A stretch of 64,000 bases of DNA from Lepidodermella squamata (taxonomy: Eukaryota; Animalia; Gastrotricha): NCBI GenBank assembly GCA_047495785.1, contig JBLDXI010000054.1:2108001-2172000 (forward strand), in the 5' to 3' direction. Positions within the stretch are counted from its first letter, which is position 1, and every line of letters starts with the position of its first letter. A program made the translations under genes and the position numbers. Of the stretch, positions 332-61,734 are shown piece after piece. The notes under the pieces are model-generated. The model saw only the letters and a program-made list of their open reading frames with translations, searched no databases and had not been told where the DNA came from.

Positions 332-3300
332 CTGGGAATTGAGGGAATTGGCATAATTGTAAGTTCTAAATGCACCCATGTGTAGGATGTATCTATGGTT
401 TTTTTCATAGGCTGATGCTTCTCGAGGTAGCCCGCCTTCATGTCCCTTCAATATCCTTTCACCTAGCAACGCTGTCACTGTCGAGGCGACTGCCTGCCAG
501 CGAGTGAATGCTTATCAGCAGCCGTTTAATTTCATGATAATTGCTACAGCTTACGACTGCAATGGTGCATTTAGGCCTCGCCTATCGTACAAAATATGGC
601 TGCTTCTGCTTCTCCCTTATCTTTTAGAAGAGGTATCGAGAGTCATTAAAAGATTTTTCCGCTCACTAGTCACTTTCTTGGAATAAACAATTTTTTTCGT
701 GCACTCTATCACGCCTAAATGTCGTCCCCTTTCGGTCTAATTCGAGTTGTAAACATGCTGAAAGTGAAGACTTTCGACGCTCCAGCATGGGTGCGGCAGA
801 TAAACTCGAAAGATGCGACGAGAATAAATTTCGAGTACGTCGAAAAAATCGAGAGCGAATACGACACCGACAAGCGCAAGGGCGTTGCTAAATTTTGTGA
901 AATTCTCAATTTTAATCTGGAGCGAGACCTCGAGATTTATGTTCAAGCAGCTAGAGAACTGCGGCTGGACTCAATCGTCAATGCGATACTAGCTGAATTG
1001 GACGCTATTACCCACCCTAAGGAGGGCGAGTACCCGTCAAAGGAAGATACAGAAGCGGCTAAAATTCTGTTAGAAAAACTAAAACCTAGACGAGAAGCTC
1101 CCAAAGTTGAGAATGAGCCAAACAGGTAAAATGAATACGAAATTTGAATTTAGGTCCTTTAAACGATCATATTATCAGAAAACCAGAGGAGCCTGCCAAT
1201 CCCCAACCTGTGCCCGATAGCAAGCCGAACAAGCCGAAAACAATGGATCTAAAGCAACTGCCGGCGCTACTTGATGAGCAACTTGATAACGACTACAACC
1301 GCGTCCAATCTGCGAAAATCGTGGGAAGCCGTGTTGATAATCGAGACGGAATCCTCCGCAGATTTGTCTCAAAAATTGACAATGTTGTTACAGAGCCGCC
1401 ATCTGCAAATAACTCCAATGACTCCGCAAAAATTAACATTTTCATAAGTTATTGCAGGCGTAGTCGCAAGGAAGCAGTTCATGAAATGGCCAATTACCTC
1501 ATGAATCAGCCTGACTTGACAGTTTGGATTGATATGCAAAATATCAGTGGCTACTCTTATGAATCTATGGCTAAGGTATGAACTACATTTCTAAAAGAAA
1601 CTAGCGTAAAAATTGCTGAACAGGGAATCGACGAGGCAGATATTGTAATATGTTTCTTCAGTCAAGAATACTCCCTCAGCCCAAACTGCAGACGAGAAAT
1701 TGAGTATGCCGCCAATAAGAATAAAGACATCCTACCGATTAGGGTCGAGAAAGGCTACCGACCCGATGGATGGCTCTTGTTCATCTTCAAATCGCAGCTT
1801 CGATTTGATTATTGTGAAGGAGATAACTTCCAAGAATGTGCTGCTAAAATCATCCAAACTGTAAAATATATGATTGGACCCAATGCTACGGCTTCAACTA
1901 AGGGCAATGTGCCTATAGAGAAAACCAGCTCATTCAAGTTAGTCAACCTATATATCAAGTAATTAAAAAGTCCCCAATAATTTTGCAGCTTCAAGGCTAT
2001 TGGAGTACCATTCTTCTCGAAATCCAAGTACTTCAGCCGAACTGAAGACGATGAGCGAATTTTACAGCAGATGAAAGTTGCGTCTCAAACTCCGGAAGAA
2101 GGCTGCTTAGTAATCAGTGGCGATGGTGGGGTTGGAAAGACAACCCTCGTAGCTCGCTTGGTCACTGATGAAAACAGGTCTAGTTTTTACGTTCAAGAAT
2201 GCAACTTGAATCGAGTGATATGGGTCAACTGCTTCGACTGGCGAGATCACTTTGACGAGAAGCCTTTCGTTGATAAAATTGTCAACTTGGCAAAGGATAT
2301 GGAAGATTCTGATAAATCAGCTTCTTTCTCGAATCTCCAGAGTGTGGCAAGTTACTACCGCAAAAAGAATCTGCGAATCGCCTTTGTCCTTGACGATATG
2401 TTCAACCATCGCCTTATCGTGTCATTCCTAGAAAAATTCAACGACCCACCGATTTGCTTTATTGTGACGAGAGACGCGCAAACAATCATCGATGCAGATT
2501 TCACAATTGTTCAGAAGGTCGAACGGGTTGAAGAATTGACCGATGATGGCATTAAAGATATGCTGAAATCGACCTTCAAACTTCACGGCGTTTTGACTGA
2601 TGACCAGCTCATGAATCTCGCGAGTCTTTGCTGTGGCCTCCCTCTCATCGCCAGCTTAATGGCGGCAAGAATTTTGAACTGCGAGGATAAAACTGAGGTC
2701 AGGGCTGAGTATAAGCGGCTCATCTCGCCTCAATACGGGATAAGAGACCTGACAATGACAACGCAAAATCGGTCTTTCAAGACTGTCTCTAGCCTGTTGA
2801 CTTTCAGTTTGGACCAAATGGATGAAAGTCTACGATATCTCTACTACGCGTTTTTGCTATTCAACCCAGCCGAGCCTGTTTCAATTTTCGATCTGGGAGT
2901 GCTCTGGGGCTTCGATCTGGACGAAGTGAATCGTTGTGGCCTCCGCCGGATCTGTCGCGCTTTCGAGAAGAGATCATTAGTTAGGCGGGTTAAAAAGTTG
3001 GTCAACGACTCGGACGAAGATGACCAGGAGAAGCAAGATGTTAGCGAAACTGAGTTGGATGACCGGGTAGAAGATCGTTTTTTGCTCCATCAAATGCTCT
3101 GGGAATCGGCTCAAGAGAAAGCTAGATCCGAATTGGGGCTCACAGGTTCAGAGGATGAATGCCTGTCAGAAATTCGGAAGCGGCTCATTTTCAACGAGAT
3201 GAATAGTCCAGATAGCAATCTGCCCAAAAACGACCAGTTAGCCATTACATTAGCCGCCTTAAAATATAGGCGTAGTATTGTGATTGAGCGAATCTATCAA

Positions 3301-3804: not shown

Positions 3805-3807
3805 TTT

Positions 3808-3823: not shown

Positions 3824-3853
3824 GAATCTCGCCTTCGTTCTTTTGTCGCTAGT

Positions 3854-4885: not shown

Positions 4886-4896
4886 GCTGGTCGGCC
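4852..4896 (+). promoter_or_regulatory. Programmed -1 ribosomal frameshift signal (gag to pol)
   Basis: In-phase slippery heptamer C CCA AAC (4852-4858), 7-nt spacer, then an 11-bp stem GGCCGGCCAGC/GCTGGTCGGCC with a 9-nt loop. The -1 frame is open from here into the protease LVDTGA. Confidence 0.8.
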
Positions 4897-9169: not shown

Positions 9170-10791
9170 CATTTTCCCACTACGGTAAGAACTACGGTAG
9201 AACTACGGCAGAGATCGGCATCATGCTGAGTCGGATAAAGAAATGCTAAGAATGGGGGTATACCAAGAGTCTGTTCCGAATCAGTGCTACACCTTTCTTA
9301 AACTCGCTTTCAACAAGCTCTATACTGCCATACCCAGAAATGACTTCTATCAAATCTTCTATGAAAGGCAAGATGGTAATGAATTTTCTTGCCTTCTGGT
9401 TGATTTGGTCAAAGAGACAGCTCGCGATTTCCAGTTGCTTCACCGCTTAACGCTAATGACAAGGATTTCAGGCTTGATTGAAGAGGGCATGGAAATTCTT
9501 TGGGAGTCAGAGTTCAGCGACCCTAAGAAGTCGCACCCCGAAATTATAATCAAAGCCTTTCACGGAGACCTAGAAGGGTTTGAAGCTTTAATTGAATCCT
9601 GCACTGATACTAAGTTGAAGGGGCTAGTTGCGACGGTAGCGACTCGGAGAACTCATCTTAAAATATTGAGGCGAATAGCTGAAGTTTGGCCTGACTTGAT
9701 TGAAGGCAGGAAAATATTCATGGCCCACTTAGCTGCGAAAAAAGGAAATCTTGATATTTTAAAGTTTTTGAATGAGCGTTCCCCTGCGTTTTAATGTTCA
9801 GCGACGATAGAAGACGGTATCCGTTGCACTGGGCTGCGGAATTTGGCCATTACGAGTGCGTTCAGTACCTCATTGATCGATACCCAGAGGCAAAGAGCTG
9901 CAAGGATGAGGATCAATGCACAGCTTTTGCATTGGCATGCCAGTATGGCCACCTTAACATCGCAGAGTTCCTCAGAGCGCAGAATCCGGAGATTGTTACC
10001 GAGTCGCTGGGAAAGGAAGGCGCCCCTCTCCGGGAGGCTGCGCGGAACAACCACCTTGAAGTTTGTAGATATTTGCTCAAAATGAGCCCTCCCATCGATC
10101 GCTTTAGCGCTCTAGGTTTAGCAGCGACATTGGGCCATGTGGACATTGTCAGATATTTTCTAGAAGAAGATCCGGAATGCGCGTGGTTCACGTCGGACGA
10201 TCCCGATGACGATATGCCGCCGATTTTGCCTGCAGCGATGGCTGGCAGTCTTGAAGTTGTTGAATTGCTGTATGGTAAGTGCAAGCATGAGTACCGCTCC
10301 GACGAAAGGATAACAGTGTTGATGGCGGCAGCAGTGACTGGCCACCTCGACATAGTGCAATTCTTGGTCGCCAAGGACCCATCGTCTGTCTACGAGAAAG
10401 ATGATGAAGACAAAACTGCTCTTGATTTGGCTGAAAAGCAGGGCCAAACGCACGTTGTTCAATTTTTGAAAGAATGCATGTGAAAAAACACTTACATGTG
10501 GAGAATAATAAAGCAAATTCTAATAACAACAACCGATAACTTGAGATCACTTGGGCCTTCATTCACCCAACCCCTATTCTCGCCTATGAAAAAAATGCAG
10601 GATTTTTTTCCTAAATTAATTGTTTACAGTTCTGAAACCTAAAATGAGAGAAAATACATTTACCTTGCCATAATTTGTTTGTTCATATTATCGTAATTTT
10701 TTAATCGTAATTTGAAAAATTAAGCATCTATATTGACGCTTAATAAAGAAATTATTTGTATCATTTCCGCTGAAAGTAACAACGCCACTTT

Positions 10792-12098
10792 CTAACTTGT
10801 AAGTGGGATCAGTCTATTTTCAGTAAGGTGGCGAATTTTAAAATTGAAATAGTTTCGCAACTGCGAGACGAATCCAGGTTTCAGGATCAGCAGCACCGGC
10901 CCGATAGCCATTTCGCTCATCAATACCAAATTGGCGACGCTAAAAAGCTCAGCAGTCAGCATATGCCGCGCGATGGGCGAGTCGTGAAACGTCATTAGCA
11001 CGAAGCAGAAAGTCATTGGCATGCAAAACAACGTATGCGTTAGAAAGGAAGATAAGGATAGCTGCGCGAAGAACACCTCCCGTTGAACCCACTCAGCCTC
11101 TCGCCGCGACGATCGAGCATCAAGTTTTACATTTCCCACTGAACTCGATTTCCGCCTCGCGGTTCGAATTACTTTAAAAGCCATCCTGTAACGGGAAAGG
11201 TTTTAATAAAGTCGATACATAACAAGAATTGAGACTCTCGGCAAGAAAAGCAATTCAATATTTTGGATGTGCCTTGGGTTACATTGATAGTAGCCGGCTT
11301 ATTTTTAAAAACTGTGACTTTGAACCCCAAACATGATGCTTTTCTCACTAAAGGTCTGCAAATATGATGAAGAAATTACAAACCAGTAATTTCGAGCTAA
11401 AACAGCTGAGGGGAAGAAAACGATTGCCACGCATGTGACGAGCTTGACAAATGAAGAATCGAAGTACCCGACTTTGAATTCGAATGAAGCGCATATCGGG
11501 GCGACGAAAGACCCGTTTAACCCCGAAAATTCGATGTATCGAATGCTGCTGTGAAAAGGGTATATCACTGACGGGAAGAGAATGGCGATGATAATAACCA
11601 AGGCCAATGTAGCTTGGGCGACAATTTTTTTAACATTCCCTCGTGGATTTGGCACAAATGACGTGACGTGATGCTTAACCGGCGTTCGTAGCTTATCAGC
11701 ATTAAAACAGGCGAGCAGAAGCTTGCTAGAATGTAAATAAGTGCTGTCAACGCCGAACACGAGTATTGGTCACCTTCCCAGAATCCACTACGAGCAGTCA
11801 GGGTGACTACAGTTGACGTTACGAAGCAATACGACGTGTTGGTGATGGCTAAAATAGTTATTAGAGCTAACAAATTGCTTCGAACTTTTCGTTTGTAGTA
11901 AATGATGACATTAGCTGTGCTGGCCATGACGACAAGGGCAGTTTCGAGCCAGAATAGGACTGTGAATATCAGGCGATCTCGAGGACTCTGAAAGGGGGTA
12001 TTAGCGCTTCCGATGAACCAATACCGGCCTTCATCTTCATCGTAGCCATGGCCTGGAATTACTGCGAAAATCCATGAACCATCCTGAGAAGTATTCAT
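10792..12098 (-). pseudogene. Orphan class-A-like 7TM receptor, copy A (frameshifted)
   Basis: Exons 12098-11384 and 11185-10792 (intron GTTTGT...TACAG). Hydrophobic TM segments, DRY-like ISYERR and TM7 AIGPVL. A 5-nt tandem duplication (acgtgacgtg, about 11661-11670) shifts the frame relative to paralogue B. Confidence 0.75.

Positions 12099-17128: not shown

Positions 17129-17174
<46 letters not shown>
17129..17174. repeat. (TTAG)n microsatellite, about 11 units
   Basis: Directly visible perfect tetranucleotide run. Confidence 0.95.
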
Positions 17175-22588: not shown

Positions 22589-25500
22589 TCAAACCACCGC
22601 TGCCGCCGGACTCGCGCACAACTGCGCGAATTCCGGCTTCGCCGCTAACACAGTCGCGCCGACGTAGGACGCGTGATAGGCGAAGGGTGCCCGGTTGACG
22701 CGCACCTGTATCGACGTATTCGCCGGCAACAACCGCACCAAGTCCGCCTCGAGGCGCTGCGCCAGCCCTGGCAAGCACGTCGGGCCGCCGCTCAGAATGA
22801 TATTGCGGTACAACTCGCGCCTGTTGTCGATCGGACACGCTTTAATGGCGTTGAAAATCAACTGAGCGAGCGAGGGCGAGTCGTGGCATATCGCCGGGTT
22901 GACGACCCTCTCCGCCGCATGGAAGCGGCCCCAGTCGGCGGCGAACACGGTGGGCAGGCCGTCGGGCAGCTCGCAGTCGGCTAAATCGACGGTGGTTTGG
23001 AATTTGTCGCGGTTCTGCAGGCACACGTTCAAATCGCGCTCGTAGTTGTCCGAGATGAAGCACAGTTTCTCGGCGAGGTAGCGCACGATCAGCAGTTCCT
23101 TCGCGCTCGAGAACGAGCAGATGTGCTTGCCGGGCAGCGTTGCGTTGAACGCTTCGAATAGATCGTGCCCGCCGTAGGGCAGCGTTAGACAGCCGGCGAT
23201 CATCGCGCACCCGGCGACTACCGGCATTATCGAGGTGTGCTCGCCGATGTGCACGACCACCGCGTCGGTTAGACCGTAAGCGTATAGCACGAGCGGTTCT
23301 TGCGTCGAGATGAAGTGTTTGGGGAAACCGAGGCTTCGCAGAACTGCGGTTAGTTGTGAGCGTTCGGTGGGGCCAATCTCGAACGGAATTGTGAGCAATA
23401 GCTGGAAAAATTAGAAAAAGTTAGAAAAAAAGATATTTTAGATTTTAGAGTAAAAATATGAAAAATTAACAAAATTCAAAAATTCGGAAACTCGAAAATC
23501 GAATATTTTTCTAAATCACGACTGAAATTGAAAAAATCGGTTTTCAAAGCAATTTTTCATAGATTAGCGGACAATCCCGCAAAAAACATTTGTTTGAATT
23601 TGATGATCAGGAAAATTTGACCCGACAATTTTGGTTGAATCAAAAATTTAAACACCAACACTTAAAACCTTGAAAATCCAAAATAATTCTACAAAAAAAT
23701 TGAATTTCCATCAATAAATGGCACATAGGGCAAAATACAGCGTGTCCTAGTAACGCAATCAAAGAAAATACAGGGAAATGGGTGCAGAAATGAAAAAATG
23801 CGAGACGAAGTGACATCTCATGGCCAATTAGAAAATTTCAAAAATAACGAGAATGGGTACCACGCATGTCACTTGTTAATGGGATTGAAAAAGTCCGGAG
23901 AAATTTGGTCCAATCGGGTAAAATACCGAAAATTACCGGACCGGTTACCATCGGGTTTTTTCGGGTTTTCTCCGGTCAATTTTTCATTTCTTCGGTAAAA
24001 TCGCGGATAAAAAAATGAAATATTCTCTTAGTATGTTTGATTGGGCGGTTCCTCTGGCCAATTTAGTTGAATTTCCTACAAAAAGTTGCCAAATTAAAAA
24101 ATAACTGCGCTTCAATTTTTTCGATTAACCCCGAAAGAAAAAGAATTTCATCCAAATTACATACTCAAATCGAAAAATTGAACTTTGAAATGAAATTTAA
24201 AAAAAATCAGATTTAATTTGTCCGCCCTATATTATCGATGGATTATCGAAATGAGAGGTAAATTGAAGAGTTAAATGTTCGCCATTCTTACCGAGTAAGC
24301 ACTAGGTTCTGAAATGCCAAGATTGTCGATGACCCGGCTGAGCAGGCCAGTTAAACACGCGAAGTCTGTTACGGCTCGTTCGCCAGAAATCGACATTTTG
24401 AAGGCATGCATCAGGCTGACTTTGTGGTCGTTATCAACCGGCGCAAACGAATCTTCGCCAAATCGAGTCCTTGAGAAAATAAAAATAATATAGGCGAAAT
24501 TAACAAAATTGACTTTTGTTAAAGAGATTTTTCAATTTAATTTGTGAAAAAAATCTTGGTAGCTAAATTCAAAATCTTTAAATTTATTCACAAAAACGGG
24601 TTGAGACTCGAAATTAATGCTTTAAAAATTTTTAAAAATTCAAAGATTTCAATTTCAAATTTTATTTTAATTTGTAAATTTTTAATTGATTTTCAATTTT
24701 AATTGAAATTTTTTAATTTAAAGAGCATACTCGATAGTGTGGCCGTCTCGAAGTGAAATTTTCGCGCCAGTCGCCGGGAAGAACACATCCGGCAAGGACG
24801 GGCGGTTCCTAAGCAGGCCGGCCCGCAGCGACGACTCGCCAATATCAACAACGAGCACGTTTTTCGCGCTCAAATCCTCGAAATTGCCATCCGCCGCAAC
24901 AGGTTGCATGTAGCGAAACATCTCCGGCAGCTCCAAAACCTGAGTAGAAAACGCGTTCAGCCACTGGTCACGCTCGTCCGGCGACGAGCATCGAAACGCA
25001 TTCCACCGGCCGTTCGGCTCTTCGACCGTAAACATGTCCGGCTCGACGAGAGCACACACCCTACCGCCGGCTAGATGCGACTGCAACGTCCGGTAGTGCT
25101 CGATAGAATCGGTCGATTTCTCCGAGACATACATCATGCCATCCCTTAGCCTCACGTATTTCCGCCGCCACGTTTTAACCGTAGTCGCCGTCTGCCGGCC
25201 GCCCTGCATCAACCGGTCCAGGTAGCCCTCCATGTTCGAAAACGAATGCTGCTGCTGTTTATTCGGGTCATTTTCCGCGTTCCCATCCAAATCGGTGATG
25301 GCGTAAATTTTGCGAACCAACGGCCTCGCGTCCCACGCCGCGAAGTTGACCTTTTTCGGCGGCAGCGCCACCTCGGCCGTGTGGAACTTGCCGATCGGCG
25401 AGTTATGCGTGTCGTCCATCAACATTCTAGCGGCTTCTTTGTGCGGAATGTTGCTTGCTGGAAGTTCGTGGGTAGTCGCAGTCGGAACCGGCGATGACGA

Positions 25501-28500
25501 TTGGCTGAATCGGTGTTTCCAATGAACAGCGTTTGCGTTTTGCGGATTCTCCTGCAGGCGCTTTTTCGTTAACTCGTACTCGTCAAGGCCGTGAACAGAT
25601 GTCTAGATGCAAAAATGGAAAAAATTGATAAAATAATTTTAGAAAAATGGCTCGATGAGAATTAATATTCCGCTAAGATGTGAATTAACGCCTGAATGCG
25701 CATTAGACTGCTTTTTTATGAGATCCTCTTGATCCACCCACATTTTTCATTCATACAGCTGGAAAAACAGGGTAAAATTGTTATTCATACAGAAAAATAC
25801 TATTCGTTTCAAAGCGCTTGATGAATGAGCTGTAGTTGGAAATTTGAATTTGCAAAATATTTTGAGGTTTAATGGTGGAGAAAGGCGTAGATAAAAATTA
25901 TTATCTCGTCACGAAAATGAGGCGGCAGTGATGGGAAAATAATTACCCCCTTCGTGCGTGAGCAGAGGTTAATGATGTGTTTTTTTTCAAAGATCTTGGC
26001 TCGTGCGCTCAAGGTATCTAGGGTTAAAATCTAACCCTTATAAACCTACAGGTCATTTCACATGAAGTGAAAAAAACTCATTTCTATCTCTAGCATGAAT
26101 TAACGCCAGAGGAACGGGTATATTAAAAATCAGGTTTTCACAACAAAATTTTCTAAAATTAAAAAATCTGCTACCTAATATGAAAAATCTCATTATTAAA
26201 TGTGTTCAAAGCTTATTTAAAATATTTTGAAAAATCCGAAAAAGCAAACGGGCTCACTTTCAAGGGAACCGAGAACCGAGTTTATTTCCTGCGGAACACA
26301 AAAATCGAATTTTGACGCATTCTGCTGTTTTCTATGATTTTGGAATTCAAAAAATTACGGTGAAATTCCACGCATTGTCTGCTAAATTTCCCACATTAAT
26401 TACGAAAAGGGTTGAAAGTGTCTAAAATCCAAGGAAATTTCCGATTTTCATGTGAACGGATAATGAACTATGAAACTTGTTACGAAGATTGAAAAATCGA
26501 AGAAATCCAGTAAAAATAGATACCAAAAATTACCAACCAATTCCCATCGAATTTTTCCCAATTTTTCCAACATTCTCCGCAAAGTATTTGAAAATCGAAA
26601 ACTAGCTGCTTAACTAATGAACATTTGTATGAAAATTATTTGGTTATTTAAAATTGGTTTCGCCAAAATATATTATTTTGAAAATCAATTCAGAACGAGC
26701 CAATTTGTCAAGTTTAATTAGCAAATGAAGCACCTATATCATGAGTTATATGCGAAAAAAGTTACATTTTTAGACGCGTTATTCACGCTAAAAATTTTGT
26801 TTGCGCAATAATTACCGCAAATGTGCAAGGTGGCTAAGAGCTCAGTTTACACTGAAACGGCCAGCGAATAATAATAATACCCAATTTTACAATAATAATA
26901 TTAATAAAACCCATGCGTCACCTTATACACCACAGAGAGCGAGCGAGAAAACGAGGCCCATTCATGTAATGTAATATCAATTAATGCGAATATAGAGCAG
27001 TTATAGCGCAGTCATTGACGTATCAACAGGTAGCAAGTAGCGCGCGGTCTAAATTATTTCAGCCGGCACGAGTCGACTGCTAACTGAATAAACTAACCAG
27101 CGTTTCGTCGTCGGCCGGTAGCTGCTGCTGTTGTTGCTGGTCGCTAATTATTTCGTCGCAGTTGTCCTCCGCCTGTTTCCCGTCATCAGTAGCCGCAGCC
27201 ACCAGCGTTTTCGTTGTTGATATTTGCGCCTCGCCGCCGTTATTTAGATCAACAGCCGCGTGTTCGTTTTCGCGTTGCCGCAACTGCGCCGCCAATTCAG
27301 CCGCCTTCGCATCGATTTCGCCCGTGATTATATTCTCGCTATTTGCGACCCAGCACTGCCGGGCCGGCGGCGCACCTGGCGACGCGATTTCATCGTCTTC
27401 GTCCTCGTCCTCTTCTTCGTCTTCTCCACTTCGCTCGCCGTTTTTCGGCTGGCTGCGGAGTGAAGATCGTAGGCTATCGATTCGCGCCAGCTCGGCGGGC
27501 GACATGCGCTCCGATTGCGCCTTAGTCTGTTTTAACAACGAAAGCAAAATCAACAATAAATCATCACAAATTAAGGCAAATAATGTGAATAAATTATTTC
27601 GGAAATTAACAACAAGACGCTATAAATTGTTGAATATAACGATTTACGTGTTCCTTTTCTATGCCGCATCGAAGACAACTCAGTTTCCACATTTTCCCGA
27701 ATTTTCGAGGTTATAGCGGAATTTTAGGCAAATATTTGTTATCTAGACAAAAAAGTCTGCGGTTCGTATTGAAAATAAAAATTTAATGGAAAAATAAAAC
27801 ATCCAGCTTAAAATTTCTAAAAAAAATGTCTACAATTTTCAAGGATTTCAAAAATTCAGAAATTATCGGAGCTATTTTCATAATACAAAATGTCATTGAT
27901 GAAATATTTTCATGGGTATGCTCAAGTTTATAAGCCAAGTTCAGTCCTACATTTACAGGAATATATAATATATAGAAAATACACAAAATGCAAGAATATC
28001 TCATTTTTTCCATATAAGTCTAAAATATGGAGCGCACAGATGCCAAATTTTATAACTCCCAAATGCCACAGAATATATTTAGGGAATATCGATTTTTTTC
28101 CCATCTAAAAACTCAATCGGCGCGTTATTCAGTGCACAAATATTGGCAATAAGAGCAAGTTCAAAACTGCCCCAAACTTAAGGAAACTATTGATTTAATA
28201 AAAAATTAGCTATATAAATTCTTTTAATAAATTATAATAATAAATTAAAAAATTCCAGAAAATTTTGAAAAAATTGAATAATAATTATTTTGCAATATAA
28301 AAGTCAGGGAAATGAATAATTCTTACCCCGTCAAGAATTTCGTTGAAATCTTCAATATCCGACTCGGTAATAGCGCTTGTAACATTCAGCTCTTCATAGA
28401 CCTGATCCTGCTTCAAATCAGCCGTGGCTTTTTCCGGCGCTTCCATCTTATCAAAATTCCTCTCAATCGCCGAAGTCGATAGAAAAGACGAATTTCGCGA

Positions 28501-34500: not shown

Positions 34501-37480
34501 GGATCGACGAGTTTCAGTTTCTTCGCATATGTCGCGAATTCGGTCTGTTTCAAGCGGAATTCATGCCGCAGCCGATCAGCGCGGGCGAATACTTGGTCCT
34601 ATATATCAGAAAAAAATGAAAACATGGCTCAAAAAATGCGGTGTATTGTCTCGAAGGGTTTGAAAAATTTCCGGCATTATATACAGTATCAATTCTATAA
34701 ATCGATATAGGTATATAGTAAAATATCACCGATAAAAAGTATAGTGCTCAAATTTTTTTGTATGCGCGCATTTCCGCATGTTGGGATAAAAAAATAATGT
34801 AAACAGCCTAGATTCCACGCAAAATCGAGATTATCGAAAAAATAACAACTCTTACCGGTTGCATGATTGACTTGATTTCAGGTGTCGCAAATTTATCACG
34901 TGGTGAAATAATAATTGTAAAATTAATATCATCATTGCTATTAAACTCAGCAGTTGGCGATAACATTTTTTCTATATTTCACACAGAAAACGGATTTAAT
35001 TTTATTATATAATGGCAGCAGTCAAAAAGTCGGCGCCATTTAGATAGAGATAAAGTGATGAAAAAAATGTGAATGACGCTCGTTTTCATTCCTGTTTACC
35101 TATATAAATGAGAAGTGCTTCGACACCTAACTAAATTTTTTCTAAAAAAAAAAGTTGGTCGTAAAGTAAGATGTGAGGCTTGTATTTACACAGGTCACAC
35201 TTTCGTCAATAGTAAAAAACACACAGGTGAATAACGCAGGTAGTAATATTATTCGTCCCTATGCCTTTGACATTATATCAGGGTGTAGCTAAAAAACCGG
35301 TAGTAAATTAATGCGCACTTGAGAATTGAAAAAAAAAATTATTTGTCCAAAAAAATGAGGTATTATTTTCAGCGAAAATATATTCCCAGAGGTGTAATAT
35401 AATGCAGAATTTTTGTACTAATATCAAATTACTGCTCTATGCCTTATCGAATGGTAAGAAAGGCCAATTTGTATGCACCTTTGGCTATGTGTTTTTTTTT
35501 ATCATGCGATTGATTCAGTCGCGAAAAATGCGCTCAGGCCCAATAATGTCACATAGCAGTGCTATAAAAGTAATATAAAATAATTATATATGCGAATATA
35601 TGCGAATGATGACCATGTGCTTTGTATATTGGACGCGTAAATAAATATAGCAGTAATAATATGAATTATGCATCACCTAAATTTTCGGTTCTGTAAATAA
35701 TAAGAAGATCAAGAAATGAGTTGACAAAATTTTCACAATCTTCTTGCACTTGCAAAACAAATTTTTACGCATATATATATAGTACTGCAATATATATCAT
35801 ATACCGGCGTGGTCACGTGTAGAGTAAATAGGAAAAAATATGATAAAATTTTACGCTGAATGACCGAAGCGTGACAACGGGCCAAATTTTGCTAAGAGCT
35901 AGCACGCGTCTCACAGGTGTAAAAAGGCAAAGTGTATTACAAACTTTACATCAAATTTGGTCACTTTTGGCTCTCGGTTCAAATAAATACGAGACGTGAT
36001 TACTGGGTGTAAAATATACACAGACTTAAAAATAATTATACATCGCGCCTAGTCGTAAAGCTTTACCAAAAATATAAGGGGCTTTCTCGGTAGAAAAATC
36101 TGGCTAAAATCCGGCTAAAAACCTTAGACAGGCTTATTCTAAAAATAAAATACTCACCTTAAAATTGTAACCGGATGAATTTATTTTTGCCGCTCATTAT
36201 AAGGTGTTGTAAAAATTTTCCTGTTTTCATAAGCAGTGTTATAACGAGCTATTTATTTAATTTTCGACTTGTAAAATATTAGACTTATATTTGCTTTTCT
36301 AGGGTGGCTGCTAATGATCCGCAACTTTCCGCGCCGTAGGACAAAAGAGCGTTATTTTTGTTGACCTAATTAGCCTTGCTGAGAGTTAAACGAAGCGAGT
36401 ATCATTATGATAATGAAAAATAAGGTGTGAAGAAAAACGAGCGCGCTTTTTATACAAATTAAAGCGCGAAAATTCAAAATTCATATCTTGAAGAATTTTT
36501 TAGAGTTCCATTTTTTTAAATCGAAATGCTTCATGAAGAGTAGTAGGAAAAAATCAATGTGTTTTAAGTTTTAATTAAACAAACCACATCACGTGAATAT
36601 TTATAAGAGAGGTGTTTAATTATTTTACGCAGCATGCCAATTCAACAATGACGTATATTCATGAATAATGGCTAAAAAATAATGTGTGTTATACCTGTAT
36701 ATAGCAAGCGTTCAATTGCCGATTATTTTGCTCGTGCTGTTTACGCAGCTGCTCATGATGATGACGATGGCCGTTATTCAAGTAATTAGCGCTCGTCGGT
36801 ACCACCGTGGCGTCAGTTTTTTGTTGTTGTTGTTTGCCGGTCAACAACAACAACTCGTTGTTATAATAATCGGTACCTGCTGAGAGGGTCGTTTGATTAT
36901 CAGCACCATCTAACACGGCGCTTGGCGGTTCCATCTTGGCACCCGGTGTGATAATGATCTTCTTGCCGATGTAAACTCCACTGTTGTTATCACCACCGAT
37001 TTGGCCGTCGTCCAACACGTCGTAAAAGTAATAAAGCCGCTCGGTACCGGCCGGGTCTAATGAACCGGAACCGGTTGTTGACATGAAGTTAACTTTCGCG
37101 TAATCGAGCCATTCGTCCTTTGGCTGAGGGGTGAATAGCCCTTCTTCCATTTTTTCATAACTGCTGGAACCTAGCTGGTACCCGGTTCCAGCCGTGACGT
37201 AGCTACTAGTACTACCCGGCGAGGCTAGCATAACCTTAGCCCGAGGCGAGGTGGCATCGAATGAAGATCTCGGGGATGATAAAACGTCAGTGAAATAGTC
37301 GCTTCGAGACGAGCTAATTTTGTCGCTCAATGGCCGTTTAGCTGCCCTATCGAGGCGGAATTTCGGGTGAGGTGCCACGTAACGGGAGGGTGTCGACGAA
37401 AAACTGACCCGACTCGCTGATGATGAACTGCTCGAGTGCGCCGGAGAAAATGCGTGATAAATCGATTGATTTTGAGTCAT
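22589..37480 (-). CDS. Large multi-exon protein (about 1,810 aa): long low-complexity region, PH domain and C-terminal actin-like domain
   Basis: Phase-compatible GT-AG exons 37480-36695, 34598-34158, 33810-33757, 33123-32890, 31475-30323, 28799-28327, 27526-27098, 25602-24731, 24469-24292 and 23401-22589 (possible alternative first exon about 34965-34856; the 3' end may splice further). PH: MEGYLDR..KTWRRKYVRL..ERDQWLNAF. Actin fold: VLVVDIGESSLRAG, LYAYG, GGHDL, CPIDNRRELYRNIILSGG and SYVGATVLA. Confidence 0.8.
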
Positions 37481-39166
37481 TATTCCAAAAAAAATTCAAA
37501 TATTTACTCAAGACATTAAACTCTAGGCAAATAATTAAAAAAATATATAGAAATTTCATGCGACCTCAAAGAAATAGAAGGGAGAAACCCCACCTTGCGA
37601 GATAAGTCACCGTAATTAGTCACCGCGGACAGTCACCTTGAAGGCATTTTTTATTAAGGAGGATAAGATTATCTAAATATTTCTGCAATTATTCGGATGC
37701 CCAATTCAATTATGCAAATCGGTGCCTGGTACCGCGCCAAATAATTCGGTGTAAATTAATTATACGAGACAATTGACGGTAATAAACAATTATGAGGTAT
37801 ATTTCCTTACACTTGAATATATTGTAAAACTACTCATAATATGCCAATAATTCTACCGGTACGCCGAGATCTGAAGCGAGGCGCGACTCGTTGACAGGTC
37901 TCGGCTAATTTATTTCTTTCCAATAAAAATTGAAGCGTGACGGAACAAGAGGGGCGACTAAAAAAGGCAGAAAAAAACGTGCAAAAGTCATAGCGCGATT
38001 ATTTTTTGCCAAAAAAGTGTGACGCCGCTGACTTTTGTCGCTATTCCATAGAGGCGTTGCGATATATAGTTACCTTTAAGGTGTTTCCGCAACCGGGTTT
38101 TTTTTATTTGCGGATTGATGCGAGCACCTACTAGCAGGTTGTTCCATGGTTGTTTTCAGCGCGCCTTTAGGGGCGGTAAATAACGGCCGAGGGGCGAGGC
38201 TAGGCAGTCGCGCCAAAAAAATGTAGAATAATAGTCTCATAACCCGGCTATTTCCGCTGCTGTCTTTTTCAAGCAGCGAGGCGTGTACATTACTTGCCGC
38301 GTGAGTGTATTATTTTCGCGCTCATCATCGCATTGCCGACAAAACAACAACACACGCGCATTGTTTCGCGCGCAGACGCACGCGCGCGAAACAGCGGAAC
38401 AGAGCGCGCAAAAACGTGCCCGCTCTGTAGGGTGTTCGCTATGCTGCTACAAAACGTTAGTTTATATTGATGTTTGCCCACCGTGTGACAATACCTACCT
38501 ATATATACCTATCAATGGGCAGGTAATAATATCGTTAAGCCTCACTCGCGCTCAAGTGAAGGCACACCGCACACTTTTTACCCTCATTATATAAATATTA
38601 CAATAAAACAATGATATTCGCAAGTCAAGTGAAAAATCGGATTTTTTAACGTTAATAGGGACCGTCATTTCCCCGCATATCTCGGCGAGACGAATCGATT
38701 GATACATATCACTAAATGTGGGAAAAAAATGACTTCAACCCCACTTTCACTTGTCAACAGGTCGTTATTGTTGTTTTGTTGACGCAGCAGTTACTGATTG
38801 ACTCCCAGGTGGCTTTTCTTCTCATTCATTGTTTCATTCAATCAGGCGCATCACGGAAACGTGATCTCTCGTAAATAGCAACCGGAAGAGGTGTGCGTGA
38901 GATGCGAAGTCTGACAATAATTGCGATTTTACGCGCACAACATTTTCCCACGGCTGGTATCAATATTGCATTAAGGCGACGCCTTTCCCTGTGATAATGT
39001 GAAACGAAAAAAAACGCGATTCTTTCATTAAGGAGGATATTGATTTTTTCGAATAACTTTTTTTCAAAAAAGTGCGTGGTCACCCTTCACGAATATGCTA
39101 ACAAAATGAGGCGAGAGGAGTCGCGTGTTCGTCGAAAGGCGTCGAGTTGCATGACCTGCTTCCAGT

Positions 39167-39350
39167 AAACTAACCTAAGGTCGGACACAGCTGCGATCAC
39201 GAAGGCGGCGGTCCCGGTGTGAGGTGGCGCCATTGCACGCGGGGGTGACTCCAACGGCGCTGCTGAGCACTGCATCCTCGCGGCACTGTCCCGGGTTTGG
39301 GCCTGCACTTTATGCGTTTGGTGGTGTTTGCGTTCGCGCAAATCCACCCT
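39167..39350 (+). ncRNA. Divergent U1 snRNA (variant 5' end AAACUAACCU)
   Basis: SL1 GGAC..GCTGC-GATCACGAAG-GCGGC..GTCC (U1-70K loop), SL2 loop CATTGCAC (U1A site), helix H AGGTC/GGCCT, Sm-position ACTTTATG, and SL4 GGTGG..TTTGCG-TTCG-CGCAAA..CCACC, all in canonical U1 order. Confidence 0.88.
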
Positions 39351-39597: not shown

Positions 39598-40251
39598 TCA
39601 AGCCGATGTTTCCAGCAGCAGTTTGAATATTTTCCCCAACTGCGTATTCGATCCTACAGCTAAAACTATCATTCGCCCAGTTCCGGACAGCACTTTCGAC
39701 GCGGCAATAAGCGTTCGGTCATGCTCCAGTGTTTTATGCACAGTTTCACGGTCATCCTCGCCGGTTGCCACGCTTTCGTCCACCTTCAAATCGCCGCTAC
39801 ACTCAACGAGCCAGCCGTCGGCCGGCAAATTATCGCCGGCCTTAAATAGGCAAATATCACCGACGACTATGTCGCAGAGTGACACAAAAACCAGCTGACC
39901 GCCTCGCAAGACTGGATAGCGCGTGTCCAACTCGGCCTGTAACTGCGCCTGTTGCATTTGTTGATCCACCCTAAACTCCGACAGGGTGTCCGAGGCGAAA
40001 CACGCGAAAATTCGAGCGAAGCAGCGTTCGCATCGCGATGTATACAACATTTCCGCCGTTGATGGCATGGTGTTTTTGCCGAAAAGTTTGCGCCGAGTTT
40101 GAATGTCAACAGCCGAGCCGGGAATGCCGTTTTCTAGCGAAGTGTTGAGCCGCCGAGCGATTTCTTCGACGGAATTCTGGCTTAAACCACTCTTTGTTTC
40201 TAACATTCGAGATATTTCACTTACAGTTACGACAAAAGGATTATCAGTCAT
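39598..40251 (-). CDS. Soluble PMCA-derived protein 2 (N-terminal cation-ATPase segment plus actuator domain, no TM helices)
   Basis: RLNTSLENGI..RRKLFGKN, then directly VLRGG..IVVGDI..GDNLPADG..DLKVDESVATGED..SGTGRMIVLAVGSNTQLGKIFKLL and a stop. Intronless and intact. Confidence 0.85.
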   Translation of the reverse strand: MTDNPFVVTVSEISRMLETKSGLSQNSVEEIARRLNTSLENGIPGSAVDIQTRRKLFGKNTMPSTAEMLYTSRCERCFARIFACFASDTLSEFRVDQQMQQAQLQAELDTRYPVLRGGQLVFVSLCDIVVGDICLFKAGDNLPADGWLVECSGDLKVDESVATGEDDRETVHKTLEHDRTLIAASKVLSGTGRMIVLAVGSNTQLGKIFKLLLETSA

Positions 40252-40300
40252 ATTATTTACAAAAAATTCTACTGTTTGTGAGAAAAATTTGAACCTAATG

Positions 40301-40942
40301 CTATTTTTCCAATCGATGATTTCCTAGCAATTTCATTATTTTTCCCACCGTAGAATTCGCTCCGACGGCAACAACTAACATCCGCCCGGTACCGCTGACA
40401 ATCTCACTTCCGGCCATAATCCACCGATCCTCGGTCAAATTTTTCGCAACATGTGCCTCATCACCAGTGATAGGCGCTTCGTTGATTCGCAGATCGCCGA
40501 TATCCGAAATTAAAATGCCATCCGCAGGTACTTCTTGGCGCGATTTCAACAGACAAACATCGCCAACTACAATTTCGCCTACAGCAATTTCATAGGGCTG
40601 ACCAGCTCGAATGACCGGCCACTTCGACTCGGTTTCCTTTCGCTTCATATTGGCTCGATATTCTCGCTCCACTCGATGGCTTTGCGAAAAACACGACAAG
40701 ATTCGCGAAAGAAAGTCATCTGAATTTTCATCTTGCAGCAAGGTATTTTTCCCGAATATTTCCTGCCGTAATTTTAGATCGTCCGAGTCGTTGGATAAGC
40801 CGAATTGTAGTGAGGTTTTCAATTTTTTCGCCAAATTTTCAATCCCGCCGAACTGGGTTTGCAATCGCTCGACGCCTTGTTGGCCTTTAAATTCTTGGAA
40901 CTGCGAAATTTCATCTGAGCTAACGCCAAAGTGACGAGACAT
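40301..40942 (-). CDS. Soluble PMCA-derived protein 1 (N-terminal segment plus actuator domain, no TM helices)
   Basis: FGVSSDEI..FGGIENLAKKLKTSLQFGL..RQEIFGKN, then VIRAG..IVVGDV..VPADG..INEAPITGDE..SGTGRMLVVAVGANSTVGKIMKLLG and a stop. Confidence 0.85.
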   Translation of the reverse strand: MSRHFGVSSDEISQFQEFKGQQGVERLQTQFGGIENLAKKLKTSLQFGLSNDSDDLKLRQEIFGKNTLLQDENSDDFLSRILSCFSQSHRVEREYRANMKRKETESKWPVIRAGQPYEIAVGEIVVGDVCLLKSRQEVPADGILISDIGDLRINEAPITGDEAHVAKNLTEDRWIMAGSEIVSGTGRMLVVAVGANSTVGKIMKLLGNHRLEK

Positions 40943-57832: not shown

Positions 57833-58911
57833 CGGATCACATCGGAAGCACGAAGGTAGAGAATTTCGATTTCGGAGTTCAACCCAAATACCACGAGCCA
57901 TCGAATTCTTCGAGATGCTTTAGTTCTGCCTATAATTGAGGGTCCTCCTTTTACCAGAACCAAGTAGCGGAACCCGATTTGTCAGCGGAAACACATTTTG
58001 GAATTTGCGAGTGGCGAGTGGTCTGAAATACTTATAAGCTTTCGGGTATTTCTTGGATGTCAAGATTGAACGCAATAGTTATAAAAAATCACCATTAATT
58101 CAGGGTAACATTCTCTATAAGACAGAGTATACAAGTCAGAACTCATACATCGCCTCGTGTTAGTAGAATTATTCAATAAGTGACTCTCGGCATGTTTCGA
58201 CTATGGTTCCGCTACAGCAAGTTAGGTTCCGCTCGCTATCAATTTGGTTCCGCTAAAAAGATATTCGAATTGTTTGGATAAAAATTTTAAATAGATAAAT
58301 AAACGCCCACCATAAATTGTTGTTTGGGTGTTTCTGTTCCTTAGACAGAGTATACAGTATACAAGTCAGAACCCATACATTTCATGGAATAAATCAAGCA
58401 AGTTTCAAAAACACAAACAAGCAAGTTTCTCGAATTTTGGTTTCATAAATAAAATACTATTTTTTGTTTTCTAGGACAAAGGGAAATCTGCCCGCCGACT
58501 CCGCACCGCATCTGTCTCCCGCCAAAGCATCGCCGCCGCTGTCGCCGCCGTCAATCACGTTGACTCGTCTATCGCTGTCGACGACAACCTGCGGTCGTTG
58601 AATGTCGCCGATGTCATAGTCCTCCACCAGCCGGAGCCTTTGCCAACAAAATATCTGAAGAAACATGCCCCCTAGCATGCGCAAAATCAAATGCCCGAAT
58701 TTAATTTGTGCATTTCAGGTTCATCGTATTAGATTAATCTGTAAAATAGAGAATAAAATCACACCATTGTCAGCGGTTTGTTTATTATTTCCCGTTTCAA
58801 GGTGATTCCAGAGAGCACCACAGGTTCAATCGTTCAGCTACCCGAAACAACAATTAGGCTACTGCAAAGGATTGGCTAGAAAAGTGCTCCTCAGTATGTC
58901 AAACTGATCCT

Positions 58912-60268: not shown

Positions 60269-61734
60269 AAAACATGAGACGTACCAGGACGTGGCGCTTC
60301 GATTTAAACGCCTGATTTTTGTGTTATTTCTTAATAAGGTCCAAAGGTCGTTGTGGCTAAAAATAACCTCATTCAGCGCGGGAGACATCGAAGCGCGGGA
60401 ACGGGTCAGGAGCGGGATGGTCAAATGCAGGTGGGCGTCTGCCAACTGGAAAATCGACAGATATAGAGGTCGTATAATGATCGCTGGTGTACCTATCGCC
60501 AACAATCACACCGCCGCGCAGCAGGCGCATTGCGGCGTCGTTAAGGACCCAAACATCGAGGGTTGACAAGGTGCCAGTGTCGAGGTGAAGGCGAGTGGGT
60601 TTCGGCGAGGGCAAGATCGTGAGGCCGAGTCGGGCTGCAGCATGGCGGAGCGAAAAGGATCAGTTTGACATACTGAGGAGCACTTTTCTAGCCAATCCTT
60701 TGCAGTAGCCTAATTGTTGTTTCGGGTAGCTGAACGATTGAACCTGTGGTGCTCTCTGGAATCACCTTGAAACGGGAAATAATAAACAAACCGCTGACAA
60801 TGGTGTGATTTTATTCTCTATTTTACAGATTAATCTAATACGATGAACCTGAAATGCACAAATTAAATTCGGGCATTTGATTTTGCGCATGCTAGGGGGC
60901 ATGTTTCTTCAGATATTTTGTTGGCAAAGGCTCCGGCTGGTGGAGGACTATGACATCGGCGACATTCAACGACCGCAGGTTGTCGTCGACAGCGATAGAC
61001 GAGTCAACGTGATTGACGGCGGCGACAGCGGCGGCGATGCTTTGGCGGGAGACAGATGCGGTGCGGAGTCGGCGGGCAGATTTCCCTTTGTCCTAGAAAA
61101 CAAAAAATAGTATTTTATTTATGAAACCAAAATTCGAGAAACTTGCTTGTTTGTGTTTTTGAAACTTGCTTGATTTATTCCATGAAATGTATGGGTTCTG
61201 ACTTGTATACTGTATACTCTGTCTAAGGAACAGAAACACCCAAACAACAATTTATGGTGGGCGTTTATTTATCTATTTAAAATTTTTATCCAAACAATTC
61301 GAATATCTTTTTAGCGGAACCAAATTGATAGCGAGCGGAACCTAACTTGCTGTAGCGGAACCATAGTCGAAACATGCCGAGAGTCACTTATTGAATAATT
61401 CTACTAACACGAGGCGATGTATGAGTTCTGACTTGTATACTCTGTCTTATAGAGAATGTTACCCTGAATTAATGGTGATTTTTTATAACTATTGCGTTCA
61501 ATCTTGACATCCAAGAAATACCCGAAAGCTTATAAGTATTTCAGACCACTCGCCACTCGCAAATTCCAAAATGTGTTTCCGCTGACAAATCGGGTTCCGC
61601 TACTTGGTTCTGGTAAAAGGAGGACCCTCAATTATAGGCAGAACTAAAGCATCTCGAAGAATTCGATGGCTCGTGGTATTTGGGTTGAACTCCGAAATCG
61701 AAATTCTCTACCTTCGTGCTTCCGATGTGATCCG

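What the first reader, a model, noticed from the sequence alone, without database searches (positions are those of the whole stretch)
39167..39350. U1 snRNA variant with a reprogrammed 5' splice-site recognition sequence (reads AG|GUUAGU)
Seen: all U1 hallmarks occur in order (70K loop GAUCACGAAG, U1A loop CAUUGCAC, helix H, UUCG-capped SL4). The 5' end is AAACUAACCU rather than A(U/A)ACUUACCU, stems II/III are longer (about 183 nt in total) and the Sm-position sequence is the atypical ACUUUAUG. Stem sequences diverge strongly from canonical U1 yet still pair, which is what selection rather than decay would produce. Established: U1 nucleotide 6 pairs with intron position +3, so U6>A shifts specificity from GUAAGU to GUUAGU. 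Seen: 4 of the roughly 18 distinct donor sites I inferred here have +3 U (GTTAGT at 1938 and 27097, GTTTGT at 11383, GTTGGT at 32889), and all 4 have G5 and U6. Inference: a dedicated U1 paralogue may serve a GUU-class intron subset in this lineage.
Basis: partly seen in the sequence, partly recalled or inferred. Interest (0 to 1): 0.88.

Follow-up and report, generated by a model that had tools for sequence, protein, structure and literature searches.

The report
Variant U1 snRNA with altered splice-site arm
An animal genome carries a structurally complete extra copy of the U1 splicing RNA in which one base of the intron-recognising end is changed, so it matches GUU-type intron starts; these are unusually common in this lineage, but nothing yet shows that the RNA is made or used.

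Summary
The U1 call holds. Rfam RF00003 matches window 39167-39349 (+) over the whole model at 70.6 bits (gathering score 69.5). It is the only RNA family hit in the window. The 5' end reads AAACUAACCU, with A at U1 position 6 (39172). A second data set, a DNA run whose contigs differ from the window by about 2-3% here, shows the same arm.

The RNA keeps helix H, four stem-loops, an exact U1-70K loop and the U1A heptamer. 42 of 46 model base pairs still pair. The Sm site is aberrant and the U1A loop carries a 17-nt insertion. It is not a retropseudogene.

The other two have no credible downstream exon.

New here: in contigs of a related organism, 5 of 21 donors defined by protein continuity have +3U and none has +3G. 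Most of these are GTTTGT, which the A6 arm matches except at +4.

Expression, cap, Sm binding and genome-wide donor statistics could not be tested. Earlier notes of this scan report other, roughly 160-nt U1 copies with intact arms elsewhere in this genome.

Verdict: a real U1 paralogue with a plausible but unproven function.

The parts
39167..39349 (+). Variant U1 snRNA gene, 183 nt
   Evidence: Rfam RF00003 at 70.6 bits, full model. It is the only Rfam hit in the window.
39167..39177 (+). Single-stranded 5' arm AAACUAACCUA. A6 at 39172 replaces the universal U6 and is complementary to +3U of a donor.
   Evidence: Sequence. Unchanged in the run X1 contig. The same downstream pattern with A6 gives 0 hits in metagenome contigs, against at least 120 with U6.
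39178..39182 (+). Helix H, 5' strand (pairs with 39300-39304)
   Evidence: CM alignment and constrained fold.
39183..39214 (+). Stem-loop 1 with U1-70K loop GAUCACGAAG (39195-39204)
   Evidence: The X1 haplotype has GAUCAAGAAG, also a canonical form.
39215..39272 (+). Stem-loop 2: 15-bp stem, U1A heptamer AUUGCAC (39232-39238), then a 17-nt loop insertion (39239-39255) that can form a 4-bp mini-hairpin
   Evidence: Two X1 substitutions (39243, 39246) fall in the insertion; one of them keeps a pair.
39273..39299 (+). Stem-loop 3 (9 bp, slightly longer than the model)
39300..39304 (+). Helix H, 3' strand
39305..39319 (+). Single-stranded Sm region GCACUUUAUGCGUUU. The heptad reads CUUUAUG where AUUU[G/U]UG is expected.
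   Evidence: None of the motifs tallied in 127 environmental U1s has C directly before UUU.
39320..39348 (+). Stem-loop 4 (12 bp) with UUCG tetraloop at 39333-39336
39075..39166 (+). Block upstream of the gene that is richer in G+C than its flank. Candidate Pol II snRNA promoter region, unverified.
   Evidence: Sequence only. No comparator snRNA genes were available. The X1 haplotype has indels at 39064-39082 and SNPs at 39116, 39128-9, 39156 and 39163.
1938..1988 (+). 51-nt intron with donor CAA|GTTAGTCA, between the TIR exon and the NB-ARC exon. It matches the A6 arm perfectly at +1 to +6.
   Evidence: The frame is continuous only after its removal. TIR_2 lies in the upstream exon and NB-ARC in the downstream exon. 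Pairing is given.
11186..11383 (-). 198-nt intron with donor CTG|GTTTGTAA in a GPCR gene, between TM5 and ICL3/TM6
   Evidence: It is the only phase-2 GT that joins the two reading frames. Supported by frame and topology, not by homology (one search gave no Pfam hit for the separate exons).

Best explanation
This is a genuine, single-copy, divergent paralogue of the U1 spliceosomal snRNA gene. Selection has kept it intact at least until recently. If it is transcribed, it should assemble as a U1-like snRNP: the U1-70K loop, the U1A heptamer, the four-way junction and SL4 are all intact. Its 5' arm ACUAAC would pair with a donor by the usual register, with A6 opposite intron position +3. That gives a continuous duplex with GUUAGU and one extra central pair with GUUUGU, compared with a canonical ACUUAC arm.

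I think it most likely acts as a minor U1 species that supplements canonical U1 at +3U donors, which are unusually frequent in this lineage.

Shown: gene identity, structure, A6 in two data sets, and the existence of +3U donors. Inferred: transcription, snRNP assembly, and use at those donors.
For: - Rfam match over the full model, with all hallmark loops.
- 42 of 46 model pairs are kept, yet sequence-only similarity to 127 other U1s is weak: nhmmer gives 21.9 bits, over SL1/SL2 only.
- The functional single-stranded motifs are essentially unchanged: 70K loop 10/10, AUUGCAC 7/7, GCGUUCGCGC 10/10, arm 9/10. Stems differ from consensus but pair. This is the pattern expected from purifying selection.
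- The three differences in a second haplotype or strain are all neutral for structure, and none is in the arm.
- There is no poly(A) tail, truncation or flanking direct repeats.
- +3U donors are supported at 1938 and 11383. In a related organism 5 of 21 protein-verified donors have +3U and none has +3G.
- The A6 arm pairs better than a U6 arm at both window +3U donors by count and run, and by duplex energy at 1938: run of 6 against 3 at 1938, dG -5.8 against -2.8; run of 4 against 3 at 11383, dG -5.0 for both arms.
- Unverified earlier notes say the genome's main U1 copies are about 160 nt with an altered 70K loop. If so, this copy is an old, separately kept lineage.
Against: - There is no expression evidence. 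The only run holding the stretch is DNA-like contigs.
- The Sm site lacks the nearly invariant A before UUU.
- The Rfam score is barely above threshold, below all 19 environmental U1s scored at 81-175 bits.
- The U1A loop carries a 17-nt insertion.
- The dominant +3U donor is GUUUGU (5 of 7), which leaves a U5-U mismatch at +4.
- Homology-supported +3A donors such as GA|GUAUGC pair just as weakly with a canonical arm, so weak pairing is evidently tolerated without a special U1.
- No A6-type U1 was found in metagenome contigs.
- In humans, most variant U1s with altered arms are barely expressed and few support splicing (PMC3561869, PMC10870369).
Confidence: 0.4

Rival explanations
1. Inert or nearly silent gene copy (a class I type U1 pseudogene, like many human variant U1s). 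A duplicated U1 gene picked up insertions, a damaged Sm site and a chance U>A change in the arm. It contributes nothing to splicing.
For: - Aberrant Sm heptad.
- Marginal Rfam score, far below other U1s.
- 17-nt loop insertion.
- No RNA holder.
- Divergence between haplotypes is not clearly lower inside the gene (3/183) than in the 400 nt upstream (10/399 plus indels).
- Secondary U1 copies with single arm changes also occur next to canonical copies in environmental eukaryotes: L008 ACUUAG and L112 ACUUAU.
- Human precedent (PMC3561869, PMC10870369).
Against: - Every protein-binding loop and SL4 is letter-perfect, while the stems have diverged with pairing kept. Decay of that depth should also have hit the 37 motif positions more than once.
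- The one arm change creates, rather than destroys, complementarity to a donor type that the lineage really uses. By contrast, the L008 change (C8>G) abolishes pairing with G+1 and the L112 change (C8>U) leaves only a G-U wobble there.
Confidence: 0.35
2. An expressed variant U1 snRNP whose role is not recognition of a donor class. It might be a stage- or tissue-specific U1 isoform, or a regulator of 3'-end formation (telescripting-like). In this reading A6 is tolerated or tunes affinity in general.
For: - Structural integrity.
- Developmental U1 isoforms and non-splicing roles of variant U1s are reported in other animals (PMC3561869, PMC13172311, PMC10645366).
- The arm does not match the commonest +3U donor, GUUUGU, at +4.
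Against: No direct evidence of any kind. Position 6 lies in the core of the 5' splice-site duplex, so a change there is expected to alter target choice.
Confidence: 0.18
3. This is the lineage's principal U1, co-evolved with its donors as in Entamoeba.
For: It has a canonical 70K loop, whereas unverified notes describe the multi-copy U1s as having an altered one. +3U donors are frequent.
Against: - About three quarters of the supported donors still have +3A or +3G.
- It is a single copy with a poor Sm site.
- Earlier notes list at least five conserved copies with an intact arm in tRNA-linked cassettes.
Confidence: 0.04
4. Assembly or sequencing artefact at position 39172.
For: The window shows frameshifts in two genes that could be homopolymer indel errors.
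Against: A6 is a substitution, not an indel. An independent run's contig carries it, while differing at 13 other positions nearby.
Confidence: 0.02

Closest known systems
[quoted passage not shown]
   Same: Paralogous U1 genes alongside canonical ones. 52% of human vU1s carry base changes in the 5' splice-site arm. Some have altered U1A regions. Function in splicing is uncertain.
   Different: Human vU1s differ from U1 by few bases and share its flanks. This copy is deeply diverged in its stems, 23 nt longer than the genome's reported main copies, and keeps its loops perfectly. Its single arm change matches a donor type that is common in its own lineage.
Co-evolved U1/donor pairs in Amoebozoa (Entamoeba ACAAAC with GUUUGU; Mastigamoeba ACGUAC; Physarum ACAUAC plus a standard U1; bioRxiv 10.1101/2022.06.08.495308)
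   Same: A natural change at U1 position 6, complementary to +3U donors. As in Physarum, a modified and a standard arm may coexist.
   Different: In Entamoeba the single U1 matches the near-universal donor, and both nt 5 and nt 6 changed. Here only nt 6 changed, +3U donors are a minority (about a quarter), and canonical-arm copies are reported elsewhere in the genome. The host is an animal.
Engineered or genetic suppressor U1s with compensatory arm changes (principle used in PMC7139742; U1 interference PMC2367729)
   Same: A single base change in the arm retargets U1 to a non-consensus donor by restoring Watson-Crick pairing.
   Different: Those are laboratory constructs or induced mutants. 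This is a natural gene with many further differences outside the arm.
U11 snRNA of the minor spliceosome
   Same: A second snRNA that recognises a distinct class of 5' splice sites by base pairing.
   Different: There is no sequence or structural relation. This RNA is a U1 by covariance model. No U11 or U12 match was found.

Membership tests
U1 spliceosomal snRNA (Rfam RF00003) | Covariance-model score at or above the curated gathering score, over the full model | tested here: met
   70.6 bits against 69.5, model 1-166, E 1.8e-15. Marginal: 19 environmental U1s score 81-175.
U1 spliceosomal snRNA (Rfam RF00003) | 5' arm ACUUACCU, complementary to GUAAGU | tested here: not met
   Reads ACUAACCU, with A at nt 6 (39172). 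All 127 pattern-selected environmental U1s have ACUUACCU, by construction of the pattern. An A6 version of the same pattern gave 0 hits.
U1 spliceosomal snRNA (Rfam RF00003) | Four-way junction (helix H plus SL1-3) followed by SL4 | tested here: met
   42 of 46 model pairs are standard. The constrained fold gives H 5 bp, SL1 10, SL2 15, SL3 9 and SL4 12.
U1 spliceosomal snRNA (Rfam RF00003) | U1-70K binding loop GAUCA(C/A)GAAG on SL1 | tested here: met
   GAUCACGAAG at 39195-39204. GAUCAAGAAG in the X1 contig.
U1 spliceosomal snRNA (Rfam RF00003) | U1A binding loop AUUGCAC closed by C-G on SL2 | tested here: met
   AUUGCAC at 39232-39238, closing pair C65-G90. The loop is 24 nt instead of 10. 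The effect on binding is unknown.
U1 spliceosomal snRNA (Rfam RF00003) | Sm site A-U-U-U-(G/U)-U-G between helix H and SL4 | tested here: inconclusive
   ACUUUAUG, that is heptad CUUUAUG. A at heptad position 5 occurs in other U1s, but C before UUU occurs in none of the motifs tallied in 127. Earlier unverified notes say the genome's other U1s also have odd Sm sites.
U1 spliceosomal snRNA (Rfam RF00003) | Transcribed, TMG-capped, Sm- and U1-70K-bound RNA | not testable with these tools
   No RNA run holds the stretch. The one run laid is contigs of DNA type.
U1 spliceosomal snRNA (Rfam RF00003) | Pol II snRNA promoter (PSE) and 3' box shared with other snRNA genes of the genome | not testable with these tools
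Variant U1 (vU1-type paralogue with altered arm) | Coexists with canonical-arm U1 genes in the same genome | not tested
   Only earlier first-stage notes say so (s1-402037, s1-394101, s1-391845, s1-422015). I could not read those loci.
Co-evolved U1/donor system (Entamoeba type) | The arm change is complementary to the dominant donor consensus of the genome | tested here: not met
   +3A or +3G in about 75% of supported donors, and +3U in 7 of 29. Small, non-random sample.
snRNA retropseudogene | 3' truncation, A-rich tail, flanking direct repeats | tested here: not met
   Full length through SL4. The 3' flank is TTGAAGTGAAG. No flanking direct repeats.

The most novel reading that the evidence does not exclude
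An animal lineage runs two U1 specificities side by side. Canonical U1 serves GUA/GUG donors. This A6 U1 (perhaps with further arm variants elsewhere in the genome) serves a GUU(A/U)GU donor class that makes up roughly a quarter of introns. That would be a natural, partly completed co-evolution of snRNA and splice site, of the kind seen so far only in amoebozoans.
Probability: 0.22. Interest if true: 0.85.

Novelty: new variant of a known kind. Interest (0 to 1): 0.55.

Why it matters
The 5' arm of U1 is among the most conserved RNA sequences in eukaryotes. Natural changes that track a changed donor consensus are documented only in a few amoebozoans. Human variant U1s with altered arms have no proven role in splicing.

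Here a structurally intact U1 with a retargeted arm sits in an animal whose relatives show about 24% +3U donors and no +3G. That gives a concrete, testable case for whether snRNA paralogues can partition introns into classes, and for how donor consensus and U1 co-evolve while thousands of introns are still present.

If the RNA turns out not to be expressed, it is one more U1 variant or pseudogene. The unusual donor spectrum of the lineage would remain as a separate observation.

Tried and rejected
1. ORF-only intron prediction (GT..AG joining open frames, AT-rich interior). GT candidates were no more numerous than decoy dinucleotides, so I abandoned it as a donor census.
2. GTTAGT hexamer enrichment, 34 observed against 18 expected. 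It is explained by a (GTTA)n repeat plus the U1 arm itself.
3. GTTAGT at 40379, 50174 and 3313 as donors. The first is coding (M-L-V-V, conserved between the two PMCA-like paralogues). The second lies inside an intron whose paralogous donor is GTAAGT. The third is undecided.
4. A putative 86-nt intron at 11634 (GTTAAA). It encodes TM4, and the frame change is a 1-nt shift in an A7 run.
5. Orthologue search through neighbouring genes. The PMCA-like ORF gave only a 30%-identity hit and the 263-aa ORF gave none. No U1 or other Rfam family is present in the relative's contigs L121-L125.
6. Species identification through the Atlas, cluster names and record names. Only 'an animal' can be said; the relatives appear only in ENA metagenome assemblies.
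7. MFE z-score as evidence of structure. Not significant.
8. Literature search for animals with GTTTGT or GUUAGU donors or for rotifer U1. Nothing relevant.
9. The arm ACUAAC equals the branch-site core. I treat this as coincidence, with no supporting evidence.

Full report
**What is there**

cmscan against Rfam 15 finds one RNA family in the 64-kb window. It is U1 (RF00003) at 39167-39349 on the + strand, covering model positions 1-166, at 70.6 bits against a gathering score of 69.5 (E 1.8e-15). A permissive rerun (E<=1) adds nothing, and there are no tRNAs.

The sequence reads:
- AAACUAACCU at the 5' end, with A at U1 position 6 (coordinate 39172);
- the U1-70K loop GAUCACGAAG (39195-39204);
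- the U1A heptamer AUUGCAC (39232-39238), followed by a 17-nt insertion;
- a single-stranded GCACUUUAUGCGUUU (39305-39319);
- a 12-bp SL4 with a UUCG loop.

In the CM alignment only 4 of 46 consensus pairs are non-standard. A fold constrained to the cloverleaf gives helix H (5 bp), SL1 (10), SL2 (15 plus a 4-bp mini-hairpin in its 24-nt loop), SL3 (9) and SL4 (12). Its energy is -69.9 kcal/mol, against an unconstrained MFE of -76.0. The MFE itself is not better than that of shuffled sequence (z = -0.69), so stability alone is not evidence of structure.

**Is A6 real?**

The only public run that holds the stretch (X1, Logan contigs, kind not recorded; depth and coverage look like DNA) comes from a haplotype or strain that differs from the window by roughly 2-3% in this region. 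Its 585-nt contig spans 38768-39356 with 13 substitutions and 24 indel letters. Three substitutions lie in the gene:
- 39200 C>A, the variable position of the 70K loop;
- 39243 G>A, which turns a predicted G-U pair into A-U in the SL2 insertion;
- 39246 T>C, in a loop.

None lies in the arm. A6 is therefore not an assembly error. The three changes are neutral for structure, but the sample is too small for a selection test. Divergence is 3/183 inside the gene and 10/399 plus indels upstream.

**How unusual is it?**

A pattern requiring AACTAACCT, the 70K loop and AUUGCAC at U1 spacing has no match in the metagenome contig collection.

Nineteen of those U1s score 81-175 bits in Rfam, so this copy lies below all of them. 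A sequence-only profile built from them sees only nt 23-84 of the window RNA, at 21.9 bits. The rest is recognised through structure.

Among about 19 additional, unselected U1 copies on those contigs, two have single arm changes (ACUUAG and ACUUAU). Arm variants in secondary copies therefore do occur elsewhere. Both changes hit C8, which pairs with the invariant G+1: the C8>G change abolishes that pair and the C8>U change leaves only a G-U wobble.

The Sm heptad here is CUUUAUG. An A at the fifth position occurs in other U1s, but C directly before UUU occurs in none of the motifs tallied in 127.

The gene has no A-rich tail, truncation or flanking direct repeats, so it is not a retropseudogene. 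It lies in an intergenic stretch between a Ser-rich ORF (36689-37480, -) and two truncated PMCA-like ORFs (39598-40942, -).

**Context from earlier notes (unverified by me)**

According to these notes the genome is an animal's, with spliced-leader trans-splicing and TTAGGG telomeres. They also report several ~160-nt U1 copies with an intact splice-site arm but an altered 70K loop and Sm site, partly in tRNA-linked cassettes. If that is right, the copy studied here is a separate and older lineage that kept the canonical 70K loop.

**The donor claim**

An ORF-only search for introns was no better than decoys. I therefore checked the donors one by one.

- 1938 (CAA|GTTAGTCA, 51-nt intron) is supported. 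Removing the intron joins a TIR_2 exon to the NB-ARC exon in frame.
- 11383 (CTG|GTTTGTAA) is supported by frame and topology. It is the only phase-2 GT that joins the TM4-TM5 exon of a GPCR to the ICL3-TM7 exon, at the acceptor ending at 11186.
- 27097 and 32889 have no credible downstream exon. Their frames end 5 and 21 codons later.

Other supported donors in the window:
- GA|GTATGC (24730) and CG|GTAAGA (24291) in a PH-Arp gene, defined by homology;
- GTGAAT and GTAAGC in the homeodomain array;
- less certainly, GTAAAA (1126) and GTGGGT (12181).

That makes 2 of about 8 independent donors with +3U. The apparent excess of GTTAGT is an artefact of a (GTTA)n repeat.

**New evidence from a relative**

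The Arp ORF has a 74%-identical match in an ENA metagenome assembly. Its contig, L121, is syntenic with window 22601-25560. A second contig from the same assembly, L122 (18.5 kb), was reached through a nicotinic-receptor exon.

Splicing out the inferred introns gives uninterrupted, conserved receptor proteins across 7 introns in L121 and 6 in L122, each 49-117 nt long. Further introns were read from conserved motifs.

The 21 donors are:
- L121: GTAAGT, GTTTGT x3, GTTCGG, GTACGT, GTATTT, GTATGT;
- L122: GTATGC x2, GTAAGT x3, GTAAAA, GTAAGA x3, GTTTGT, GTATGT, GTATTG, GTACGT.

Position +3 is A in 16, U in 5 (24%) and G in none. Position +4 is a pyrimidine in 13. From my own knowledge, +3U is only a few percent, and +3G roughly a third, in well-studied animals. 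If +3U were 5%, five or more in 21 would be expected about 3 times in 1000.

The sample is small, and four of the five +3U donors are in one gene. With the window, the total is 7 of 29. Five of the seven are GTTTGT, one is GTTAGT and one is GTTCGG.

**Mechanism**

By the established register (C8:G+1, A7:U+2, nt6:+3, nt5:+4, C4:G+5, A3:U+6), A6 gives a continuous six-pair duplex with GUUAGU. It adds one central pair with GUUUGU but leaves the U5-U mismatch at +4.

For 1938 the A6 arm gives a run of 6 pairs against 3 for a U6 arm, with duplex energies of -5.8 against -2.8 kcal/mol. For 11383 the runs are 4 against 3.

Homology-supported +3A donors such as GA|GUAUGC pair with a canonical arm over only 3 contiguous positions. 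This lineage therefore clearly tolerates weak U1 complementarity, and a dedicated U1 is not logically required.

**Weighing**

For function:
- the loops are perfectly kept and the arm is nearly intact, while the stems are diverged but still paired;
- the one arm change creates complementarity to a donor type actually in use;
- the gene is not a retrocopy.

Against function:
- the Sm site is deviant;
- the model score is marginal;
- the U1A loop carries an insertion;
- there is no RNA evidence;
- the arm matches the main +3U class imperfectly;
- in humans, 52% of variant U1s have arm changes, yet they are expressed at under 0.2% of U1 and few support splicing (PMC3561869, PMC10870369).

I put a functional variant aiding +3U donors at about 0.4, an inert copy at about 0.35, an expressed variant with another role at about 0.18, the principal U1 at about 0.04 and an artefact at about 0.02.

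**Comparison with what is known**

Natural arm changes complementary to the donor are described for Entamoeba (ACAAAC with GUUUGU), Mastigamoeba (ACGUAC) and Physarum (ACAUAC together with a standard U1) (bioRxiv 10.1101/2022.06.08.495308). Lineages that prefer GUAUGU keep a canonical U1 (same source).

The present case resembles Physarum and human vU1 in that arms may coexist. It resembles Entamoeba in the position that changed. It differs in being in an animal, in changing only nt 6, and in facing a minority donor class.

It is a member of the U1 family by covariance model, with one defining feature (the arm) tested and not met, and another (the Sm site) inconclusive.

**Limits**

I could not read the rest of the genome, any canonical U1 of this species, any RNA reads or any orthologous locus. 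The organism could not be named.

Noticed in passing
L121:3150-4420 (-), L122:7300-8660 (+), L122:5600-6420 (-), L122:~17080 (-), L122:~1340 (-): Contigs of a related organism from ENA metagenome assemblies (ERZ23486787 and sister samples) show an unusual donor spectrum. Of 21 protein-verified donors, +3 is A in 16, U in 5 and G in 0, and +4 is U or C in 13. GTTTGT occurs four times. The introns measured in the two receptor genes are 49-117 nt.
   Followed up: partly
window 1200-3426 (+): TIR-NB-ARC gene. The TIR domain is interrupted by an in-frame TGA at about 1579-1581, with conserved TIR sequence on both sides. This could be a pseudogene, a polymorphism or an error.
   Followed up: partly
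window 11625-11631 (-) and about 9785-9800 (+): One-base frame shifts inside otherwise continuous coding sequence. One is in an A7 run between ICL2 and TM4 of a GPCR, the other between ankyrin repeats. They could be homopolymer indel errors of the assembly or recent pseudogenes.
   Followed up: no
window 22601-25560 (-): One gene fuses a PH domain to an actin-related protein. It has introns of about 260 and 890 nt. The same fusion and gene order are conserved in the metagenome relative (L121:3-1877), where the gene is more compact.
   Followed up: partly
window 17132-17173 (+): (GTTA)n microsatellite of about 10 units. It inflates the GTTAGT/ACTAAC hexamer count.
   Followed up: yes
window 39598-40942 (-): Two tandem ORFs of 217 and 213 aa, 37% identical to each other. 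Each has a Cation_ATPase_N domain plus the first ~100 positions of the E1-E2 ATPase domain, and each ends in a stop just after the '...GKI.KLL' motif. The U1 gene lies 250 nt beyond the 3' end of the second ORF, on the opposite strand.
   Followed up: partly
window 58159-58480 (+) and 61090-61408 (-): Identical sequence in inverted orientation, with the same GTTAGT context at 58159 and 61408 and the same candidate intron at 58425 and 61142. It flanks reverse-transcriptase ORFs, so the arms of an inverted repeat of a retroelement are likely.
   Followed up: no
window 3767-8289 (+): G+C-rich (57%) Ty3/gypsy-type LTR retrotransposon pol region (RT, RNase H, integrase). It lies immediately downstream of the NB-ARC ORF and may have been inserted into that gene.
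   Followed up: no
window 39170-39175 (+): The altered arm ACUAAC is identical to the core of the yeast-type branch-site consensus (UACUAAC). There is no evidence that this matters.
   Followed up: no
L008:1164-1289 (+), L112:4733-4874 (-): Secondary U1 copies on environmental eukaryotic contigs with single changes at arm position 8 (ACUUAG, ACUUAU), next to canonical copies. They are probable pseudogenes and give a rough base rate for arm variants.
   Followed up: no
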